A stretch of 59,621 bases of DNA, counting the filler, from Sluysia triapertura (Eukaryota), in the NCBI GenBank assembly GCA_046118255.1. It is 5 parts of 5 records of this genome, joined end to end, with 100 filler letters (N's around TTAATTAATTAA, not from the genome) between each part and the next. Parts side by side here need not be neighbours in the genome. Positions count along the whole stretch, not along the records: positions 35,043 to 47,516 come from JBJNIA010105541.1; 4 more parts are not named here. One strand, given 5' to 3'. Positions within the stretch are counted from its first letter, which is position 1. Every line of letters starts with the position of its first letter. The notes under the pieces were generated by a model. That model had not been told where the DNA came from. It saw only the letters and a program-made list of their open reading frames with translations, and did no database searches. Positions 35,043-47,616 of the stretch are shown piece after piece. The position numbers and the translations under genes were made by a program.

Positions 35043-35116
35043 GTTCAACGCGATTTCCTATAACGCGATTTCATACAACACGTAACATATTAATCGCGTT
35101 ATACGGGAGTCTACTG
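35043..35116 (+). mobile_element. Right terminus of a pogo/Tigger-like element
   Basis: Subterminal taacgcgatt repeats and the end ...cgcgttatacgggagtctactg followed by TA. Confidence 0.6.
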
Positions 35117-35824
35117 TACTAACAATCGTTTGTTAAATTTTTTAGACTTTATTTACGTCGAATATAAAATTGTTTTGTAAAATCTTGTTGATTATATAAA
35201 AATTAGTATTTGATAATTTCTAAATTATTATTATTTATTATAAATAAGGATTTAAATAATTTGTTTAAGATCATATTGTTATCATTATACTTTGTAACAT
35301 AGTTAACGGTATTTCATATAAATAATTTATCTTTGACTTTTATTTATAATTTGTTAAACCTTATAATGTCTAAATCTTATAATAATAAATCTTTTATTTT
35401 AATTTGCTGTGTCTACTTAACATAAGTTAATGTATTGTTCACTACTAAGAGGAAAAATATTTCTAAAATTTTAATTTCTTAAGGCATTCATTAACTCCTA
35501 GGTAACCTGTCATAGTAAAAAATTTACTAGCATATTCCCTATTAAAACCATTAATTTGACAACATATTGACGTGTCATTGTTCATATGATATCTGCTCTT
35601 TGAAGAAGCTGAATAACTTATATAGATTTAACGTAAGGCAAAATCCTGGATCGTAATAAAAACAAAAATTTCATTTAATCTATATCCTTTTTAAATAACA
35701 GGATCTTATTTAAAATACTTGACTTAATTTCGCTGTAAAAGCGGAAACCCAACATTAATAAAACCAATAGCAAGAATATTTAAGACATCATTAATTGACC
35801 TCCATTTTTACAATTTTATCTTAC

Positions 35825-35880
35825 GCTAACACATACGAACTGGCTCTTAAGTGAGTAAGTCCAGGATCTTAAGGAGCTCA
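35825..35880 (+). ncRNA. Twister-like pseudoknot motif, copy X1
   Basis: UAA-CACAU-AC-GA-ACUGG-CUCUUAAG-UGAGU-AA-GU-CCAGG-AUC-UUAAG-GA-GCUCA; aligns with the 55.3-kb and 58.9-kb copies. Confidence 0.35.
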
Positions 35881-37059
35881 CACACATTCAATTGAGTTAT
35901 ATAATATAATATAATATAGGCATAATTAAATATTGTTAGAGCAAGAATAATGAACAATCATTTTGAAAGAATAATCATTTTGAAACCGGTGAACATATTA
36001 GAATTCCAAAGAACTTTGCTTGGAACTTTTAAAATGTTCAAATATTAAAATTATGTTTAATTATATTAAAGATAAATTTGATACATTAATAATTAAAATA
36101 AAAAAGTAGTAAAAGGAATCAGAGTAGTGACGGTGAAAACAACCAGAGCCTCCTGCGTATCTTATAAAGTATTGAACAACTTTATAACCATAATAAAACC
36201 TTTAAAGTTAGAATAAAATAAGTTAAAATAATTAATTAATTAATTAAATCTTAATTAGGAAAAATTACGTTTATGTCTATTGAATAATTGACAATTTATT
36301 GAATAATTGTTTAAAATCAATAGTAACAGTAAGCCAGTATTAATTTAATTTACTTAAATAAAATTAATTGATTAAATTAATAAACTTAAATGATTTCAAT
36401 ATCCACTAGATCAAGTTTAACTTATAAAAATTTTCTTATTTTAAATATGTTCTTAATTTATATTAAAAACAATGAGTCAATAATATAATAATTACAAAAT
36501 CAAATACAAGTCGTTATTATAAGTCTCTGCTTGAACAATAATACAAGTAATCTAAATGGAAAATAACTAAATTTCAAAGTTAACAATAAAATTTTTGACA
36601 CTAATAAGACAAGAAAAATATATTCAAAGAAACCAGAGGTGATTTAATAAAGAACAAAAATTAAAATACCAATATCTAAAGAAATTGAAATCAATAATAA
36701 TATTTTTATCTTGTCGAATAACTGTAAAATAATTTGCGCAGTGTTCCTCGATTTCAGAATGATTTTAAACACTTTACTGTTCATTATTCTTGATCTAGAA
36801 ATATTTGATTATATTTATATTATCACATTTCAGCTGTTTTCTATCACTTTCTTATATATTTTAAATTCACATAACTTATAATCTATATTCTATACACTAA
36901 CTGGACAATCCCAACACATCAATTATATAAAATCAAATCAAGGAAAAATCCAGTCCCGACAGCGATGAAAAGAGGTAGCCCATAGATACTATGTTTATAT
37001 TAGTCTTGCCAAATTAATTAAATAATTAATTAAGTAATTAATAATAATAATCAAATTAA

Positions 37060-37630
37060 TTACTTAATAAATAGTTTATCAAAATTGTATTCAATAAATA
37101 ATTTCGCCAACTTGTTTTAAAACTAATTTTTTATTCAATAAATAGTTTTCCCAAATTGTATTCCAAGTAATAATTTAATCAATAGTCTCTAAATTGTTTT
37201 TAAACTAATTATTCAATAAAGCTTCTCTAAATTATTTTCAAACTAATTATTCAATAAATAGTTTTTGCAAATTGTATTCAAACTAATCATTCAATAAATA
37301 TTTTAATAAATAGTTCAGTAAATAGTTTTTTAAATTGTTTTCAAACTAATTCTTTATTCAATAAATAGGTTTTAATTATTAAATAAATATTTAAATAAAT
37401 AAATATTTATATAATTATTGAATAGTTTTTTTTAATTTTCAAATCAATTATTCAAATAGTTTCTCCAAATTGTATCAAACTAATTATTGAATAATAGTTT
37501 CTCAAATATGTATTCAAACTAAATGTTGAATGATTAGTATTCAAATTGTTTTTAAATTGTTTATCTCAATTGTATTCAACTATTTATTCAATAAATATTT
37601 TTTCTATGTTGTTTTCAAATTAATTATTTG
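37060..37630. repeat. Degenerate minisatellite of about 38-40 bp (aaattgtattcaaactaattattcaataaatagtttctc)
   Basis: Tandem units here and at about 38400-38560, 39840-40350, 41570-42140, 42915-43070 and 44350-44875. Confidence 0.9.
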
Positions 37631-38601
37631 TATTCTTAGTGTAGTGCACCTTCTTTAGAATAATTTTTTTAGTGTTATATTTTGACTTAAAATTTATTTA
37701 TCCAATTGTGACTTTATTTTCTTCATGGTTAATTTATTTTCACAGTTAATATTGTTATTCAACCAGTTTCTTTATAGGATAAAATATATTTTTAAATTAT
37801 ATTCTATATATTTTCGTTTATATTAGGCCAATTTATTAAAAACAAACCATGATAGCAATAAAATTATTATTATAATTATTATTTTTGTGTCTTTTATACT
37901 TTTTATTTTAAAAATTATCACTTAAAACTCAGTAACTAAATAAATTCAAAATCTAGATATATTTTTTTACATTATTACAAGATTACAACAAATATTCTTT
38001 ACAATAATAACAAAACAAATTATTCTTTAAGAGTTATTGTTTATCTACTTCAAAATTACAATCTGTTAATATTAACAAATCCAGACCAGGGGTCACAATT
38101 TATTTTTAAATTATACACCCATATTAATACAAAATGCAATCAATAATGAACACGTTACCAACCATTGTTCCTATTTAATAAAAATGCTTTATTTTAGCCA
38201 ATTTCTGAAGAAATAGCTTCAATTCAATAGTTATCCACTGATGAATTGAAGCAGCGTCCCTACATATAGAACATTTTGTTATCTTAACTCTATTTATTGT
38301 CTCTGTCCTTTTTCTTTAATTTTCTTGCAGAAGTGTAACCGCTTATATAGCAGTTTTATGATAATAACATTCACCTATTCTGTTATTCTGAGTCTTATTA
38401 AATAAAGTATTTAATCAATTGTTTCTCTAAATTGTTTTCAAACTAATTATTCAATAAGCAGTATTCAAATTAATTATTGAATAAATAGTTACTCTAAATT
38501 GTATTCTAACTATTATTCCATAAATAGTATTCAAACTAAGTATTGAATAAATATGTTCAACTTTTTCTAAGTTAGGAACAATTATGAAATTATTAAACTT
38601 A

Positions 38602-39100
38602 TCGGTTCGCCTTTGACGTACGGTTTATATTACGTGATAGACGTACTCACAGGATTTTTGGAGAAAAATGCTACGTAAAGAAATCCTTACTACTTAGTTG
38701 CAATAACTATGCTGATGCCTCAAATATATTTTTGCAATACCTGTCTAATTTGTAGATGTTCTACTATAACTTAATTAACAGTTACTTATTCAAAAGTAGG
38801 CGAAAATCGTTTAATTATTTACTTGAACTATAATTAATCAATTAATTAATTAGTAAAATTAACTATATCAAATACAAAAACTTCAAGAATCAAAGGATAT
38901 ATTTATCAAAAATAATAGAAAAATATATAAATTATAAAGAAAATTGAAACTATGAATATAGATATAAAACTTCAGGATTTGTCCTGGATAATAATAAATT
39001 TTTGATTTTGAATAAGATTTTGACTAAGGCGAATGCTTGAGTTTCGAGATTATGGTGATTTTTAGTGTATATTAAGGCAAAGTATTATTGCTGGAACTTA
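38602..39100 (-). repeat. Divergent copy C of the hairpin family (duplicated at 43115-43613)
   Basis: Terminal hairpin TCGGTTCGCCT...AGACGTAC...AGG at 38602-38653; shares gatataaaacttc and gctggaactt with copy A; lacks CAACACC units. Confidence 0.55.
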
Positions 39101-39501
39101 ACAAAAATTAACAAACTTATCCATGGCTTGAAAAAACAGTATGATTTTCGAAACAATATCTTCTAAATAGATTAATGACAAATCTGATAATTGTTGACAA
39201 TTCCGACTTAATACCACAGAGTATTTTAAGCTCGACGATTCCAAATAACTATTGAATACCACGGAGTAGTTTAATATTAACGATTCCAAAAAATTTGCCG
39301 TTTAATGTTTCCAATAGACAGTCTCTCTTTTTTAGTGTGTATTTTGTTACACTGTTACGCCTTTTATGCCGCTTGTTTGCCAATAATAAATAATTTGTTT
39401 ATTTTAATGAATTTAAGTTTTTACGAGATAATATAAATAGTTAACCAATAAATAATAATATTTAATCCATTTTCAAAAAAATATAATGTAATCTTTTCAT
39501 T

Positions 39502-39576
39502 AAACATAAACGATAAAAATGTGAACATAAGCGATAAAAATGTAAACATAAACGATAAAAATGTGAACATAAACGA
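39502..39576. repeat. 21-bp tandem repeat (aacataaacgataaaaatgtg), about 3.5 copies; duplicated at 44015-44089
   Basis: Direct reading. Confidence 0.9.
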
Positions 39577-42500
39577 TTTTAGCCCAATAATAATATAAAT
39601 ATTTTTCAACTTTGAATCAAATAATATAAAGTTAATTTCCTTTGTCGTTTTTATTTTTTTAAATAATCAATTATAATTAAAAATTTTTTATTGAATTTGT
39701 ACAATTTATTTTCTTTTTAATATTTACAAACTTTCATTAAATCATTTTATTTTTACAGATTAATTTTAACAGATTTATACATTTACATTATTTACAAATA
39801 GTTTCGGCCAAGAATATCCAAATTAATATTACCATTTTTTCTAAATTGTATTCAAACTAATTATTCAATAAATAGTATTCAAATTAAATATTTATTATCT
39901 AAATTTTATTGAAATTAATAATTTAATCAATAGTTTCTTTACATTGTATTCAAACCAATTATTCAATAAATAGATTTTTTTAATTTTCAAATTAATTATT
40001 CAATAAATAGTTTCTCCAAATTGTATTCAAACTAATTATTCAATAAATATTCTTTTTAAGTTTCAAATTAAATATTGAATAAATAGTTTCTCAAATATGT
40101 ATTCAAACTAGATGTTGAATTGTTTATAAATTGTTTATCTCAATTGTATTCAAAACAATTATTCAATAAATATTCTTTTTAAGTTTCAAATTAAATATTG
40201 AATAAATAGTTTCTCAAAAATGTATTCAAACTAAATGTTGAATAAGTAGTATTCAAATTGTTTTTACATTGTTTATCTCAATTGTATTCAAACCAATTAT
40301 TCAATAACTAGTTTTTTTAATTTTCAAATTAAATATTCAATAAATACTTTTCAGATTTACGTAAATAAAGGATGTATCAATTACAATATGATGATGAATT
40401 ATGAAAATTAATCAGCAGTTTAATTGTAAGCAGTTTAAATTATGGCTGGTTATACTAATTGCTTTTAAAATGCACTAATTTTAATTTAAAATCTTTATTA
40501 TATGAAATGATTAAAGATGAATTATTGAATACTTCAAATCAGGACGCAAACCATCCAATATATGGTACTAAATTTCAAGATATAATAAGTAAATTTAAGG
40601 ACGAAGATTACTATGTGGTAATGCATACTGAATTAATAATTTTTAAATCCAAGTGGTATTCCTTATTATCTAGTACTAATGAATACACTACAGCTGAACG
40701 AATCATACGGAAATGCACCAATATAAGTCATCAAGAATATAAATAATGGTATCATTTTGAAGATGGTATCATTTATTCTATATGTCAAACGAGATTTGGC
40801 TCAAAAATCCATATGTTGCGTCTTTAAAATCAATAGTAACAGTAAGCCAGTATTAATTTAATTTACTTAAATAAAATTAATTGATTAAATTAATAAACTT
40901 AAATGATTTCAATATCCACTAGATCAAGTTTAACTTATAAAAATTTTCTTATTTTAAATATGTTCTTAATTTATATTAAAAACAATGAGTCAATAATATA
41001 ATAATTACAAAATCAAATACAAGTCGTTATTATAAGTCTCTGCTTGAACAATAATACAAGTAATCTAAATGGAAAATAACTAAATTTCAAAGTTAACAAT
41101 AAAATTTTTGACACTAATAAGACAAGAAAAATATATTCAAAGAAACCAGAGGTGATTTAATAAAGAACAAAAATTAAAATACCAATATCTAAAGAAATTG
41201 AAATCAATAATAATATTTTTATCTTGTCGAATAACTGTAAAATAATTTGCGCAGTGTTCCTCGATTTCAGAATGATTTTAAACACTTTACTGTTCATTAT
41301 TCTTGATCTAGAAATATTTGATTATATTTATATTATCACATTTCAGCTGTTTTCTATCACTTTCTTATATATTTTAAATTCACATAACTTATAATCTATA
41401 TTCTATACACTAACTGGACAATCCCAACACATCAATTATATAAAATCAAATCAAGGAAAAATCCAGTCCCGACAGCGATGAAAAGAGGTAGCCCATAGAT
41501 ACTATGTTTATATTAGTCTTGCCAAATTAATTAAATAATTAATTAAGTAATTAATAATAATAATCAAATTAATTACTTAATAAATAGTTTATCAAAATTG
41601 TATTCAATAAATAATTTCGCCAACTTGTTTTAAAACTAATTTTTTATTCAATAAATAGTTTTCCCAAATTGTATTCCAAGTAATAATTTAATCAATAGTC
41701 TCTAAATTGTTTTTAAACTAATTATTCAATAAAGCTTCTCTAAATTATTTTCAAACTAATTATTCAATAAATAGTTTTTGCAAATTGTATTCAAACTAAT
41801 CATTCAATAAATATTTTAATAAATAGTTCAGTAAATAGTTTTTTAAATTGTTTTCAAACTAATTCTTTATTCAATAAATAGGTTTTAATTATTAAATAAA
41901 TATTTAAATAAATAAATATTTATATAATTATTGAATAGTTTTTTTTAATTTTCAAATCAATTATTCAAATAGTTTCTCCAAATTGTATCAAACTAATTAT
42001 TGAATAATAGTTTCTCAAATATGTATTCAAACTAAATGTTGAATGATTAGTATTCAAATTGTTTTTAAATTGTTTATCTCAATTGTATTCAACTATTTAT
42101 TCAATAAATATTTTTTCTATGTTGTTTTCAAATTAATTATTTGTATTCTTAGTGTAGTGCACCTTCTTTAGAATAATTTTTTTAGTGTTATATTTTGACT
42201 TAAAATTTATTTATCCAATTGTGACTTTATTTTCTTCATGGTTAATTTATTTTCACAGTTAATATTGTTATTCAACCAGTTTCTTTATAGGATAAAATAT
42301 ATTTTTAAATTATATTCTATATATTTTCGTTTATATTAGGCCAATTTATTAAAAACAAACCATGATAGCAATAAAATTATTATTATAATTATTATTTTTG
42401 TGTCTTTTATACTTTTTATTTTAAAAATTATCACTTAAAACTCAGTAACTAAATAAATTCAAAATCTAGATATATTTTTTTACATTATTACAAGATTACA

Positions 42501-45500
42501 ACAAATATTCTTTACAATAATAACAAAACAAATTATTCTTTAAGAGTTATTGTTTATCTACTTCAAAATTACAATCTGTTAATATTAACAAATCCAGACC
42601 AGGGGTCACAATTTATTTTTAAATTATACACCCATATTAATACAAAATGCAATCAATAATGAACACGTTACCAACCATTGTTCCTATTTAATAAAAATGC
42701 TTTATTTTAGCCAATTTCTGAAGAAATAGCTTCAATTCAATAGTTATCCACTGATGAATTGAAGCAGCGTCCCTACATATAGAACATTTTGTTATCTTAA
42801 CTCTATTTATTGTCTCTGTCCTTTTTCTTTAATTTTCTTGCAGAAGTGTAACCGCTTATATAGCAGTTTTATGATAATAACATTCACCTATTCTGTTATT
42901 CTGAGTCTTATTAAATAAAGTATTTAATCAATTGTTTCTCTAAATTGTTTTCAAACTAATTATTCAATAAGCAGTATTCAAATTAATTATTGAATAAATA
43001 GTTACTCTAAATTGTATTCTAACTATTATTCCATAAATAGTATTCAAACTAAGTATTGAATAAATATGTTCAACTTTTTCTAAGTTAGGAACAATTATGA
43101 AATTATTAAACTTATCGGTTCGCCTTTGACGTACGGTTTATATTACGTGATAGACGTACTCACAGGATTTTTGGAGAAAAATGCTACGTAAAGAAATCCT
43201 TACTACTTAGTTGCAATAACTATGCTGATGCCTCAAATATATTTTTGCAATACCTGTCTAATTTGTAGATGTTCTACTATAACTTAATTAACAGTTACTT
43301 ATTCAAAAGTAGGCGAAAATCGTTTAATTATTTACTTGAACTATAATTAATCAATTAATTAATTAGTAAAATTAACTATATCAAATACAAAAACTTCAAG
43401 AATCAAAGGATATATTTATCAAAAATAATAGAAAAATATATAAATTATAAAGAAAATTGAAACTATGAATATAGATATAAAACTTCAGGATTTGTCCTGG
43501 ATAATAATAAATTTTTGATTTTGAATAAGATTTTGACTAAGGCGAATGCTTGAGTTTCGAGATTATGGTGATTTTTAGTGTATATTAAGGCAAAGTATTA
43601 TTGCTGGAACTTAACAAAAATTAACAAACTTATCCATGGCTTGAAAAAACAGTATGATTTTCGAAACAATATCTTCTAAATAGATTAATGACAAATCTGA
43701 TAATTGTTGACAATTCCGACTTAATACCACAGAGTATTTTAAGCTCGACGATTCCAAATAACTATTGAATACCACGGAGTAGTTTAATATTAACGATTCC
43801 AAAAAATTTGCCGTTTAATGTTTCCAATAGACAGTCTCTCTTTTTTAGTGTGTATTTTGTTACACTGTTACGCCTTTTATGCCGCTTGTTTGCCAATAAT
43901 AAATAATTTGTTTATTTTAATGAATTTAAGTTTTTACGAGATAATATAAATAGTTAACCAATAAATAATAATATTTAATCCATTTTCAAAAAAATATAAT
44001 GTAATCTTTTCATTAAACATAAACGATAAAAATGTGAACATAAGCGATAAAAATGTAAACATAAACGATAAAAATGTGAACATAAACGATTTTAGCCCAA
44101 TAATAATATAAATATTTTTCAACTTTGAATCAAATAATATAAAGTTAATTTCCTTTGTCGTTTTTATTTTTTTAAATAATCAATTATAATTAAAAATTTT
44201 TTATTGAATTTGTACAATTTATTTTCTTTTTAATATTTACAAACTTTCATTAAATCATTTTATTTTTACAGATTAATTTTAACAGATTTATACATTTACA
44301 TTATTTACAAATAGTTTCGGCCAAGAATATCCAAATTAATATTACCATTTTTTCTAAATTGTATTCAAACTAATTATTCAATAAATAGTATTCAAATTAA
44401 ATATTTATTATCTAAATTTTATTGAAATTAATAATTTAATCAATAGTTTCTTTACATTGTATTCAAACTAATTATTCAATAAATAGATTTTTTTAATTTT
44501 CAAATTAATTATTCAATAAATAGTTTTTACACATTGTATTTAAACTAATTATTGAATAATAGTTTCTCAAATTGTTTTTACATTGTTTATCTGAATTGTA
44601 TTCAAACTAATTATTAAATAAATATTCTTTTTAATTTTCAAATTAAATATTGAATAACTAGTTTTGTTTAATTTTCAAATCAATTATTCAATAAATAGTT
44701 TCTCCAAATTGTATTTAAACTAATTATTCAGTAAATGGTTCCGGCAAACAGTATAGAAATTAATAATACAATTTGCTAGTTTCTCAAAATTGAATTCAAA
44801 TTAATAATTTAATCAATAATTTTGCTAAATTGTATTTAAACTAATTATTCAATAAATCGTTTCCAAATTAATTATTTTATTCTTAGTGTAGAACACCTTC
44901 TTTAGAGTAATTTTGTTAGTGTTATATTTTGACTTTAAATTTATTTATCCAATTGTGACTATATTTTTTTCATGGTTAATTTATTTTCACAGTTAATATT
45001 GTTATTCAACCAATTTCTTTTTTAGATAAAATATACTTATTCAATTAAATTATATATTTTCGTTTATATTAGACCAGTGTGATAGCATGTAAAATTGAAA
45101 GTTAGTTCATTAGGTAACATGGCTTACTACTAGTTATGTTAGTTTAAAGTAAGTTAGATATTATTATTAGATAATCATTTAATTATATTACTTATATTAT
45201 TATTACTATTAGATAATGAAAATAAAATTCATTTTATAAAATATTTATGCAAAATGTTCATAATTAGTATTCAATTATTTGTAAAAAGTGATATTTAATA
45301 AATAATATGCTAATACATTATTATAATTCAATTTTTAACAGTAGTGGAAATTAGGTTTTATCAAAATGTCTCTAGATTTAAATTTCCGATGTTTTGCGTT
45401 AAAAACAAAAAAATTGATTATTTTCTGCGGAAAACATTAAATATTTCATTCTATAATCAAGCGCCAGTTAATTTGTAAGTTTACTTTATTTATATTATAA

Positions 45501-45789
45501 ATTCATTTCAAAGGATTTAACACCATATAACATATTAGTTTCATATTTCACATTCTTTATAGTTCACGTAATTTTCCTTCATGAATTTTTATTCTATTTT
45601 ATTATTATTTTAGCACATATTTCATTACTAAGTATATATTGTGGAATAAATTATATTATATATAAAGTTCTTTTATTTTGGTTATAAAATTTTGATTAAA
45701 TCATTACTTTTAGTTTATATAATAAAGGATTTTTAAAAATTAGTTACTTTTTGTTTGAATTTGAAGCATTATTTTACATCGAAGAAAAA

Positions 45790-47229
45790 ATGGTATTGTT
45801 TTGTTTTTATTTACTTGTTGTTTTATAGAACGACTTTTGTGAAGTTATATTGGAAGAAATTGAAGAAAATTTTGTCATAAATATTGAAAATAATGACCAC
45901 AAATTTATGACTAATTCACAATATCAATTAAAACCCTACGAATTTAACCAATGTGAAATATTATCGACGGATGTAAATCAAATGAATAACGTGGAATCTG
46001 AAAATTGTCTTGAGAATGTAAATAAACATAATGATACTCGGGAACATAAAATAATATATAAATGTCCTTCTTGTACGAAGTCATTTAAATATACTGCTGC
46101 ACTGAAAAAGCACTTAAATCAATTTCATTCAGTAGATAGGTACATTTGTAAAAAATGTGGTAAAGATTTCTCATCACTATCTGAGGTTCATTTGCACTCT
46201 AGAATGGACAAGGGTAAATATGGAATGCAAAGTTTTAGATTTAAATGTACTATGTGCTGCTATAGTACAGAAAACCAACATACTTTGATAAATCATGTGA
46301 ATGTTCATAAAGGTATACGACCGTTCAAGTGTAACTTTTGTGATCAAACATTTACACAAAATTCAAATATGAAATCTCATATGATTCGTCACCTCGCAAA
46401 AATTCGTATTTTCGCATGTATCACATGTAATACCTCGTATAGTTCGTACGATATTTTGTTGTCACATTATTCAACCAGAGAACATGAATTGACTTGGCAC
46501 ACATTAAGTTGCGATACAATCGTATGTCTCAATGGTGAGAAATTTAATAATTTAGATGATTTTATGAGATACCATAGAAAATGTGCACAAATGAAAGACG
46601 ATAGTTACAAATTTAAGTGCGGTCTCTGTGATGAACATTTCAAAGAAAGTAAAGACATTTTTCTACATTTACATGAAAATAAGAACAATCACATTCGAAA
46701 TTCATTCAAATGTCCCATTTGTTCTGAATCTAATTTTGTATCACTTAATAAAGTTAATACCCATTTGACTAAGATTCACTCAATGAAAGTAGAACGACGC
46801 CATGTCTGTCGTTATTGTGAAGAAATATTTATTGACAAAATTTTATTATACACACATATTCAACAAAATCACAAAGACCTTATAAATTCTCGAACATCAA
46901 AATGTGACAATGGAAGATATTTATGTATCATTGATATTTGCCAGTACAGCACTAATTCAACATTAAAATTGTACAGCCATTATTCAAAAATGCATCAATT
47001 AAAACTGGAAGATATAATAAAAAGTAGTTTAAATGAACTTAATTCGATAAACAAAGAAGAGATAATTGAAAACATGGTAAAAAAGCAATGTCAAACCGAA
47101 TCAAAACGAAAACGTGGTAGACCGAAAAAATCTGAATCAGAATTCCATAAAAACTCGAAGTTAGAAAAGAATAAACTTCGGAAACGAGGTAGACCAAGTT
47201 TGTATACTTCAAATTTATTTGCACAGTAA
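45790..47229 (+). CDS. C2H2 zinc-finger protein with two C-terminal AT-hooks
   Basis: 459-aa ORF with about 10 C-x2/4-C-x12-H-x3/5-H units, an HKGIRPFKC linker, and KRGRPKK and KRGRPS. Likely start is ATG at 45790-45792 followed by a 36-nt GT-AG intron (45793-45828), in frame. Confidence 0.9.
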
Positions 47230-47616
47230 AATACTTTTGGTTTAAATATATTTTTCTAGTAATATTTACAAATTGTTTGTCTATATAAATGAAAAACTCA
47301 TTGAAGTTACTGACTTAAAATAGTCAAATGTTCATATCATCAGGATTTTACCACAATTATGAAAATAATTGTCAGAAATGAAATGCACATAATGCAGAAA
47401 TAATGAACAACAAAAATAATAAACACTATATATTTGATTATTTTATTTTGACAATTGTTTAATTATATTATTTTATTTTGACAATTGTTTAATTATATGA
47501 ACACAAAATATTTGATNNNNNNNNNNNNNNNNNNNNNNNNNNNNNNNNNNNNNNNNNNNNTTAATTAATTAANNNNNNNNNNNNNNNNNNNNNNNNNNNN
47601 NNNNNNNNNNNNNNNN

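What the first reader, a model, noticed from the sequence alone, without database searches (positions are those of the whole stretch)
38602..38653. Terminal hairpin of the family shows compensatory base changes across three diverged copies
Seen (minus-strand RNA): A CCUAAUA-GUACG..CGUAU-G-UAUUAGG; B CCUAAUA-GCACG..CGUUU-A-UAUUAGG; C CCUGUGA-GUACG..CGUAC-G-UCAAAGG. All are followed by invariant CGAACCGA. In C two pairs change on both sides (A-U to U-A, U-A to G-C), a purine bulge is kept, the loop starts with UCU, and loop length varies from 8 to 20 nt. Inference: a conserved RNA (or ssDNA) structure such as a 3'-end, processing or replication signal. I cannot assign it to a known family.
Basis: partly seen in the sequence, partly recalled or inferred. 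Interest (0 to 1): 0.7.

Follow-up and report, generated by a model that had tools for sequence, protein, structure and literature searches.

The report
Conserved hairpin of a high-copy repeat
The hairpin is real and belongs to an interspersed repeat present in hundreds of copies in an AT-rich, probably arthropod genome, so it is most likely the recognition stem-loop of a mobile element rather than a cellular RNA gene.

Summary
The hairpin is at 38610-38653 on the minus strand, followed by CGAACCGA. An exact twin lies at 43115-43166 inside a 3.65-kb perfect duplication.

This copy is decayed. Copies A and B lie outside my piece and could not be checked.

Contigs of the only public run holding the locus show a high-copy repeat: 94 contig variants at the loop, summed depth about 13,000 against 18-28 for exact-match contigs. 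Their majority letter at 38613 restores a perfect 7+5 bp stem (z -3.6 to -4.2). They read CGAACCCG, so the flank is not invariant.

A second strong hairpin at 35057-35106 (+) carries the same 10-letter loop motif, CACGTAANATA, found nowhere else. Its stems have different letters but are fully complementary. A degraded relative at 38730-38831 shares AGGCGAA and GTTTAATWATTT.

A conserved loop with covarying stems is therefore supported.

Best reading: the 3' tail stem-loop of a non-LTR retrotransposon or SINE family (0.4). Main rival: a Helentron/HINE-type DNA hairpin (0.2). It is a new member of a known kind, of modest interest.

The parts
38610..38653 (-). Outer stem 38653-38647 / 38616-38610, with a G.A mismatch at 38650/38613. 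Inner stem 38646-38642 / 38622-38618. Bulged G at 38617. 19-nt loop 38641-38623.
Evidence: Sequence read directly. With the majority letters of run X1 the fold has z -3.6 to -4.2.
38602..38609 (-). CGAACCGA directly 3' of the hairpin. It is part of the recurrent motif AGGCGAA (TTCGCCT on the plus strand).
   Evidence: TCGGTTCGCC occurs only here and in the twin. TTCGCCT occurs three times per unit against 0.16 expected. Most related contigs differ at 38602 and 38603.
38626..38636 (-). Loop motif CACGTAATATA, shared with the loop of hairpin D.
   Evidence: CACGTAANATA has 3 matches, all inside these hairpin loops, against 0.02 expected.
38551..38700 (-). Approximate extent of the repeat unit around c1: upstream part, hairpin, AGGCGAA, GTTTAATAATTT (38598-38587), and a tail ending ...TTGAACATAT next to the satellite array.
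   Evidence: A related contig that is 84% alike spans 38550-38697 and diverges beyond 38550. Summed depth drops from about 8,000 to about 430 at about 38557 and fades from 12,984 (38638) to 266 (38724). Tail motif.
43115..43166 (-). Exact twin of the finding inside the perfect duplication 36310-39955 = 40823-44468.
35057..35106 (+). Hairpin D: CC, then 12 perfect base pairs, then a bulged C, then GG, with a 21-nt loop UCAUACAACACGUAACAUAUU. A likely distant relative with the same architecture and loop motif but different stem letters.
   Evidence: (DNA z -3.2; 0 of 200 shuffles fold as well). The single-sequence covariance model does not recognise it (1.9 bits).
38730..38831 (+). Degraded relative c2, in the opposite orientation to c1: a possible outer stem UCUACU/AGUAGG, AGGCGAA at 38798-38804, and GTTTAATTATTT at 38809-38820.
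   Evidence: Motifs are colinear with c1. One X1 contig skips exactly 38730-38831. Local similarity to c1 appears only in this orientation, p about 0.06. Its fold is not significant.
38983..39066 (+). Possible relative c3: CCUGGAU...ACUAAGG followed by CGAA (AGGCGAA at 39027-39033). It sits in a second high-depth block.
   Evidence: depth 3,000-11,700; the majority letter at 39026 again restores G-C at pair 4. Similarity to c1 has p about 0.09. The fold is not significant.
38653..38661 (+). GAUUUUUGG on the plus strand directly after the hairpin: an Sm-site-like run, relevant only to the small-RNA rival.
   Evidence: Read directly. It is absent next to hairpin D, and no Rfam family matches.

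Best explanation
The hairpin is the conserved stem-loop module of a high-copy interspersed repeat, that is, a mobile element of this AT-rich, probably arthropod genome.

In that model the element's RNA folds into the stem-loop. The element-encoded ORF2 protein recognises the stem by shape and the loop by sequence. Reverse transcription is then primed at the short tail that follows (AGGCGAA ... GUUUAAUWAUUU ... UUGAACAUAU).

Shown here: high copy number, a decayed local copy, a perfect stem in the family majority, and a loop motif conserved between two hairpins whose stems differ but stay paired.

Inferred: I put about 0.8 on 'mobile-element module' in general and about 0.4 on this specific kind.
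For: - Copy number: 1,261 contig pieces at least 80% alike were laid on 1.5 kb. There are 94 contig variants at 38638, with summed depth 12,984 against 18-28 for the exact-match contigs. Most pieces are 80-95% alike.
- Depth rises stepwise toward the hairpin from the minus-strand 5' side: 266, 726, about 1,070, 2,267, 12,984. It ends sharply at about 38557. Variably 5'-truncated copies sharing a 3' end would give this pattern.
- Hairpin D shares the loop motif CACGTAANATA (expected 0.02), and all of its stem pairs have different letters yet are complementary.
- c2 shares AGGCGAA and GTTTAATWATTT in the same order (expected 0.16 and 0.15).
- Short modules of about 100-120 nt occur in both orientations (c1 against c2 and c3).
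- Stringent-type LINEs are reported to recognise a 3' tail stem-loop in two parts, the stem generally and the loop specifically (PMC4176376; PMC1636434).
Against: - No reverse-transcriptase or endonuclease coding remnant lies near it.
- No poly(A) or short-unit microsatellite follows the tail, and no target-site duplication could be seen in the AT-rich flanks.
- The one contig that skips c2 shows no shared letters at the joint.
- Contig depth is a crude measure, and the dip at 38600-38617 is unexplained.
- A palindrome folds equally on both strands and as DNA, so nothing here proves RNA.
- There are no RNA data.
- c2 and c3 are only weakly similar to c1 (p 0.06-0.09).
- The single-sequence covariance model finds no further copy in the piece.
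Confidence: 0.4

Rival explanations
1. The hairpin is the 3' stem-loop of a non-autonomous Helentron-type rolling-circle element (HINE / DINE-1-like), read on the plus strand. The layout would be: short inverted repeats at 38164-38173 and 38573-38582, a central tandem array at 38395-38557, the stem-loop after the right repeat, then the 3' end in a T-rich site. The hairpin would form in single-stranded DNA and mark the end of strand transfer by the Rep/helicase.
For: - A perfect 10-bp inverted pair ATTGTTCCTA/TAGGAACAAT occurs only there.
- A satellite-like array lies between the arms.
- The stem-loop follows the right arm, and a T run follows the stem.
- This anatomy matches HINE and HLE2 descriptions (PMC4067079, PMC11417382).
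- High copy number fits.
- The c2 skip shows no shared letters at the joint, as expected for an element that makes no target duplication.
Against: - The inverted pair is not significant (p 0.09).
- The other three arrays in the piece lack the module, and c2, c3 and D do not adjoin arrays.
- The hairpin would lie about 45 nt or more from the end and the right repeat about 120 nt from it, both outside the published ranges.
- Similarity fades gradually past the stem instead of stopping sharply.
- No Rep/helicase partner is available for comparison.
Confidence: 0.2
2. It is another DNA-level inverted repeat: a pair of protein-binding half-sites, or subterminal repeats of a cut-and-paste transposon or MITE. 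The two arms would change together because one protein binds both, not because a strand folds.
For: - The arms covary between c1, c2 and D.
- ACGT-core motifs cluster here, and TTCGCCT occurs three times in both orientations within 430 nt.
- A 15-nt inverted pair at 38528-38542 / 38691-38705 brackets the unit.
Against: - The loop motif is conserved and asymmetric.
- No target-site duplication is visible.
- The bracketing inverted pair resembles the satellite unit itself.
- The stem-plus-bulge geometry is kept while the letters change.
Confidence: 0.12
3. It is a multi-copy Sm-class small RNA gene, or a pseudogene or SINE derived from one, on the plus strand: a stem-loop directly followed by the Sm-like site GAUUUUUGG and a small 3' stem. 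The 5' part recalls flatworm spliced leaders.
For: - The Sm-like run touches the hairpin.
- AAACTTATCGGTTC matches 12 of the first 14 letters of the Fasciola-type leader listed in PMC3795323.
Against: - The 14-mer match is expected by chance 0.08 times in this window, and the family majority fits it less well (3 mismatches).
- No GU donor follows a WWG leader end.
- Hairpin D has neither feature.
- Copies are 80-95% alike, like decaying repeats, not homogenised gene arrays.
- Rfam gives nothing even at E 10 on 300 nt.
- The nearest protein clusters of the neighbouring gene are arthropod, a group in which spliced-leader trans-splicing is not general (my own knowledge).
Confidence: 0.06
4. It has no function: a palindrome inherited from a master copy, with chance resemblances among AT-rich sequences.
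For: - This copy folds no better than shuffles.
- Conservation inside one repeat family can be shared descent alone.
- c2 and c3 are weak.
Against: - The majority sequence is a clear outlier.
- D keeps the architecture and the loop motif with fully exchanged stem letters.
- Motif recurrences are far above shuffle expectation.
Confidence: 0.07

Closest known systems
3' tail stem-loop of stringent-type LINEs and their partner SINEs (eel UnaL2/UnaSINE1, zebrafish ZfL2-1/-2; PMC1636434, PMC4176376)
   Same: Both are a short stem-loop near the 3' end of an interspersed repeat. The loop sequence is conserved while stem letters change but stay paired. Copies are many, short and decayed, and become more abundant toward the 3' end.
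   Different: There is no short-unit 3' repeat or poly(A) after the tail. No RT-encoding partner was seen. The loop is much longer (19-21 nt). RNA nature is not shown.
Helentron / HINE / DINE-1 3' stem-loop (HLE2; PMC4067079, PMC11417382)
   Same: Both are non-coding high-copy repeats in arthropods with a 3' palindrome, sometimes carrying tandem repeats, in T-rich sites and without target duplication.
   Different: The inverted repeats are not significant here. Distances to the presumed end exceed published ranges. The arrays are not consistently linked to the module. The stem here is 12 bp plus a bulge, against 5-10 bp.
Canonical Helitron 3' hairpin followed by CTRR
   Same: Both are a G+C-richer hairpin near a repeat end in AT-rich DNA, with the structure kept while letters vary between families.
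   Different: On neither strand is there a CTRR 10-12 nt after the stem with a T following. No 5' TC end was identified.
Origin stem-loops of Rep-encoding single-stranded DNA replicons (loop nonanucleotide NANTATTAC)
   Same: Both have a covarying stem and a conserved loop. The plus-strand loop of c1 reads TTATATTAC (8 of 9 letters of TAATATTAC). D has an 11-nt direct repeat overlapping its stem arm, resembling iterons.
   Different: Position 2 of the nonanucleotide is wrong in both hairpins, and D also has G in place of A. The loops are longer. No Rep gene is present. Hundreds of genomic copies would be unprecedented. The comparison rests on my own knowledge of the motif.

Membership tests
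Any Rfam 15 RNA family (snRNA, SL RNA, ribozymes, histone 3' stem-loop and others) | A covariance-model match at or near the gathering score | tested here: not met
   No match at E<=1 over the whole piece. Only a chance CRISPR-repeat hit at E 9.6 on 301 nt.
Stringent LINE/SINE 3' tail | A stem-loop close to a shared 3' end of an interspersed repeat | tested here: met
   The hairpin lies 55-60 nt (c1) or 31 nt (c2) from the point where related contigs stop matching.
Stringent LINE/SINE 3' tail | Copies truncated at variable 5' positions | tested here: inconclusive
   The stepwise depth gradient from 38724 to 38638 fits, but summed contig depth is a crude measure.
Stringent LINE/SINE 3' tail | Target-site duplications, and a 3' microsatellite or poly(A) | tested here: not met
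   Neither is seen at c1 or c2. The joint of the contig skipping c2 has 0 shared letters.
Stringent LINE/SINE 3' tail | The same tail on an RT-encoding partner element | not testable with these tools
   The genome is not available. There is no RT remnant in the piece.
Helentron / HINE (HLE2) | Terminal or subterminal inverted repeats of 11-16 nt | tested here: inconclusive
   One perfect 10-bp pair (21 nt at 81%), p 0.09 against shuffles.
Helentron / HINE (HLE2) | A stem-loop after the right repeat, 8-35 bp from the 3' end | tested here: inconclusive
   The order is right on the plus strand, but similarity continues about 45 nt or more past the stem.
Helentron / HINE (HLE2) | Insertion between T and T, confirmed by empty sites | not testable with these tools
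   No empty sites are available. T runs are frequent in this DNA.
Canonical Helitron (HLE1) | A 3' hairpin followed within about 10-12 nt by CTRR and a host T, plus a 5' TC end | tested here: not met
   Read on both strands: only CTAC 21 nt after the stem on plus, and CTAA then C 34 nt after on minus.
Sm-class snRNA / spliced-leader RNA | An Sm site between stem-loops, a discrete transcript, and a splice donor after the leader | tested here: inconclusive
   An Sm-like run is present in c1 only. There is no canonical donor, no RNA run and no Rfam match.
Protein-coding exon | An open frame with a codon-like substitution pattern and homologues | tested here: not met
   All three minus-strand frames stop inside the hairpin. 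The 52-aa plus-strand frame has no word-sharing protein. By my own codon reading, four of the six majority changes in the hairpin block alter the residue and two are silent.

The most novel reading that the evidence does not exclude
The hairpins are origin-like nick sites of a so far undescribed kind of non-autonomous rolling-circle element in an animal genome. A Rep-type HUH endonuclease would cut inside the loop, unlike known Helitrons.
Probability: 0.05. Interest if true: 0.8.

Novelty: new member of a known kind. Interest (0 to 1): 0.3.

Why it matters
If confirmed, the module gives a compact diagnostic (the loop motif plus a paired stem) for annotating an abundant repeat family in a poorly known AT-rich genome. 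It would also add a natural covariation series for how a mobile-element enzyme reads a stem by shape and a loop by sequence. It does not point to a new cellular RNA. For the scan, the useful lesson is that a hairpin shared by 'three diverged copies' in one window was the visible tip of a family of hundreds of copies.

Tried and rejected
- Rfam over the whole piece at E<=1, and over 301 nt at E<=10: nothing. tRNA scan: none.
- Metagenome scan with TCGGTTCGCCTNNNANNNACG: 120 loci, all G+C-richer chance matches without the hairpin.
- Viral and prokaryotic genome scans with ACGTGANAGACGTACTCACAGG: 0 matches.
- Single-sequence covariance model R1: it finds only c1, its twin and the palindrome's own opposite strand. 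Hairpin D scores 1.9 bits.
- Protein routes to other copies or to the organism. The 52-aa frame across the hairpin and the 95-aa ORF at 40459-40743 have no word-sharing proteins. The zinc-finger ORF has only generic C2H2 hits and is not on record as a called gene. Pfam on seven small ORFs gave nothing.
- Rejected ideas:
  - Hammerhead-like core: CUGUGAG is not CUGANGA.
  - tRNA B-box SINE: only GGTTCG fits.
  - Homology of the c1 block with the right flanks of the other satellite arrays: p 0.17-0.73.
  - c1 and c3 as long terminal inverted repeats: local alignment scores below the shuffle mean.
  - TTGAAC as an end marker: it is not rare.
- RNAalifold on c1 plus D failed because MAFFT does not align the arms. 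Pairs were therefore counted by hand and by script.

Full report
**Setting.**
- The piece 35043-47516 is 22% G+C with no CpG depletion.
- Its only clear gene is an intron-less ORF at 45850-47229 encoding C2H2 zinc fingers and AT hooks. It has only generic relatives, and its nearest Atlas clusters are mostly arthropod.
- I therefore treat the source as an animal, probably an arthropod, of unknown species.
- Positions 36310-39955 are repeated without a single difference at 40823-44468 (offset 4513). The repeat continues at lower identity to 40357/44869.
- The finding therefore has an exact twin at 43115-43166, which is not an independent copy.

**The observation.**
- With RNA parameters the 76-nt context prefers another fold, and the energy is ordinary (z -0.95).
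- Within the piece the site is still among the handful of most stable 50-nt windows. This largely reflects its 43% G+C in a 22% background.
- All three minus-strand frames stop inside the hairpin. The 52-aa plus-strand frame has no relatives. A coding explanation is rejected.

**Copy number.**
- One public run (X1, stored as Logan contigs, possibly the source sample) holds the locus.
- Laying its contigs on 38200-39700 at 80% likeness or more gave 1,261 pieces, most of them 80-95% alike.
- Exact-match contigs have depth 18-28. At the hairpin, summed depth reaches 12,984 with 94 distinct contigs at 38638.
- Separate very high blocks lie at 38230-38264, 38326-38365 and 38965-39066.
- The hairpin therefore belongs to an interspersed repeat with hundreds of copies. 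Depth is a rough guide; the number of distinct contigs is the firmer figure.
- Where most related contigs differ from this copy:
  - 38613 T>G (65 contigs) turns the G.A into G-C.
  - 38617 C>T makes the bulge an A.
  - 38638 T>A lies in the loop.
  - 38602 T>C and 38603 C>G make the flank CGAACCCG.
- The local copy is thus a decayed member of a family whose master sequence has an intact hairpin.

**Extent of the repeat unit.**
- A related contig that is 84% alike spans 38550-38697 and diverges beyond 38550.
- Depth falls from about 8,000 to about 430 at about 38557, where a satellite-like array begins.
- On the other side depth fades stepwise: 12,984 at 38638, 2,267 at 38662, about 1,070 at 38677-38683, 726 at 38698 and 266 at 38724.
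- The unit is about 120-150 nt, and the hairpin is central-to-3' on the minus strand, not strictly terminal.

**Relatives inside the piece.**
- A scan for G+C-containing hairpins found a second strong one, D, at 35057-35106 on the plus strand. It consists of CC, twelve perfect pairs, a bulged C and GG, around a 21-nt loop. Its DNA z is -3.2, and none of 200 shuffles fold as well.
- D's loop, UCAUACAACACGUAACAUAUU, shares CACGUAA.AUA and the UC start with the c1 loop, in the matching orientation.
- The pattern CACGTAANATA occurs only in these loops, against 0.02 expected.
- The stems differ at nearly every position yet remain complementary: UGUGA/UCACA against UAUAA/UUAUA, and GUACG/CGUAC against CGCGAUU/AAUCGCG.
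- TTCGCCT (AGGCGAA on the other strand) occurs three times per unit against 0.16 expected: at c1, at 38798-38804 (c2) and at 39027-39033 (c3). The last two are in the opposite orientation to c1.
- c2 also carries GTTTAATTATTT in the same position as GTTTAATAATTT in c1, and the motif is found nowhere else (expected 0.15).
- By my own pairing, c2 can form UCUACU/AGUAGG directly before CGAA. This differs from the c1 majority by double changes at pairs 4, 5 and 6. I give it only as suggestive, because RNAfold pairs only CUAC/GUAG of it and its fold is not significant.
- One X1 contig skips exactly 38730-38831, so c2 behaves as a discrete 102-nt segment.
- At c3 the majority letter at 39026 again restores G-C at pair 4.
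- Local similarity of c1 to c2, c3 and D appears only in the predicted orientation, but each is weak (p 0.057, 0.087, 0.093).
- The single-sequence covariance model finds none of them.
- I regard D and c2 as probable relatives and c3 as a possible one.

**What the comparison shows.**
- A stem kept by compensatory change, a conserved and asymmetric loop, and a bulge on the 3' arm all hold up.
- The element behaves like a mobile-element module, not a cellular RNA gene.
That statement remains unverified.

**Mechanism.**
- *Preferred reading: retroelement 3' tail.*
  - Stringent-type LINEs and their SINE partners carry a 3' tail stem-loop. ORF2 recognises the stem generally and the loop specifically (PMC4176376, PMC1636434).
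  - That fits the conserved loop with covarying stems, the conserved tail after the stem, the short modules in both orientations, and the depth gradient that looks like 5' truncation.
  - Against it: no RT remnant nearby, no poly(A) or short 3' repeat, and no visible target duplication.
- *Main rival: a Helentron/HINE-type rolling-circle element on the plus strand* (PMC4067079, PMC11417382).
  - It would have short inverted repeats (38164-38173 and 38573-38582), a central tandem array, a 3' stem-loop and a T-rich site.
  - However, the inverted pair has p 0.09. The other three arrays lack the module, and the other modules lack arrays. The distances to the presumed end are too long.
- *Rejected: canonical Helitron.* Its end (CTRR 10-12 nt after the stem) is absent on both strands.
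- *Less likely: an Sm-class small RNA.*
  - On the plus strand the hairpin is followed by GAUUUUUGG, and the preceding AAACTTATCGGTTC matches 12 of 14 letters of a flatworm spliced leader listed in PMC3795323.
  - That match is expected 0.08 times by chance, and the family majority fits it worse. D has neither feature, the copies look decayed rather than homogenised, and Rfam is silent.
- *Most novel reading not excluded: an origin-like nick site for a Rep-type endonuclease.*
  - The loop reads TAT(A/G)TTACGTG on the opposite strand, and there are iteron-like repeats next to the stem.
  - I give it about 5%.

**Limits.**
- Only summary variant tables of the related contigs could be seen, and 86 further variant rows were not shown. 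No formal covariation statistic over many copies could therefore be computed.

**Verdict.**
- The structure is real at the family level and decayed in this copy. It belongs to a high-copy repeat.
- It is a new member of a known kind of signal (a mobile-element terminal stem-loop), with the class still to be settled.
- Interest is modest.

Noticed in passing
window 36310-39955 and 40823-44468: A 3,646-bp repeat without a single difference (offset 4513), continuing at lower identity to 40357/44869. The two copies are separated by a unique stretch of about 470-870 bp. It is either a very recent segmental duplication or an assembly artefact.
   Followed up: partly
window 37010-37630, 38395-38557, 39836-40350, 44349-44876: Four satellite-like tandem arrays, all in the same orientation, built from units such as TTCAAACTAATTATTCAATAAATAG that are about 70-80% alike. 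Only one of the four adjoins the hairpin module.
   Followed up: partly
window 38216-38252 (twin 42729-42765): The most stable hairpin of the piece, an 11-bp stem GCTTCAATTCA/TGAATTGAAGC (DNA z -5.1). It sits in a segment where related contigs sum to depth about 87,000 (52 contigs at 38246). The neighbouring 38326-38365 reaches about 150,000. These are further, far more abundant repeat families.
   Followed up: no
window 35043-35070: Next to hairpin D, the 11-mer AACGCGATTTC occurs twice in direct order, the second copy forming part of the 5' arm. The piece ends here, so the left context is cut off.
   Followed up: partly
window 35990-36040: Another significant hairpin (GTGAACAT...ATGTTCA with an inner stem; DNA z -3.3) that has no evident similarity to the family.
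   Followed up: no
window 39503-39598 (twin 44016-44111): About 4.5 tandem copies of a 21-nt unit, AACATAAACGATAAAAATGTG.
   Followed up: no
window 45850-47229: An intron-less 459-codon ORF with multiple C2H2 zinc fingers and two C-terminal AT hooks. There is no close homologue in the protein collections, and the nearest Atlas clusters are arthropod.
   Followed up: partly
window 40459-40743: A 95-codon open frame in the unique spacer between the two repeat copies. I estimate about 0.2 such frames by chance at this base composition. It has no Pfam match and no word-sharing protein.
   Followed up: partly
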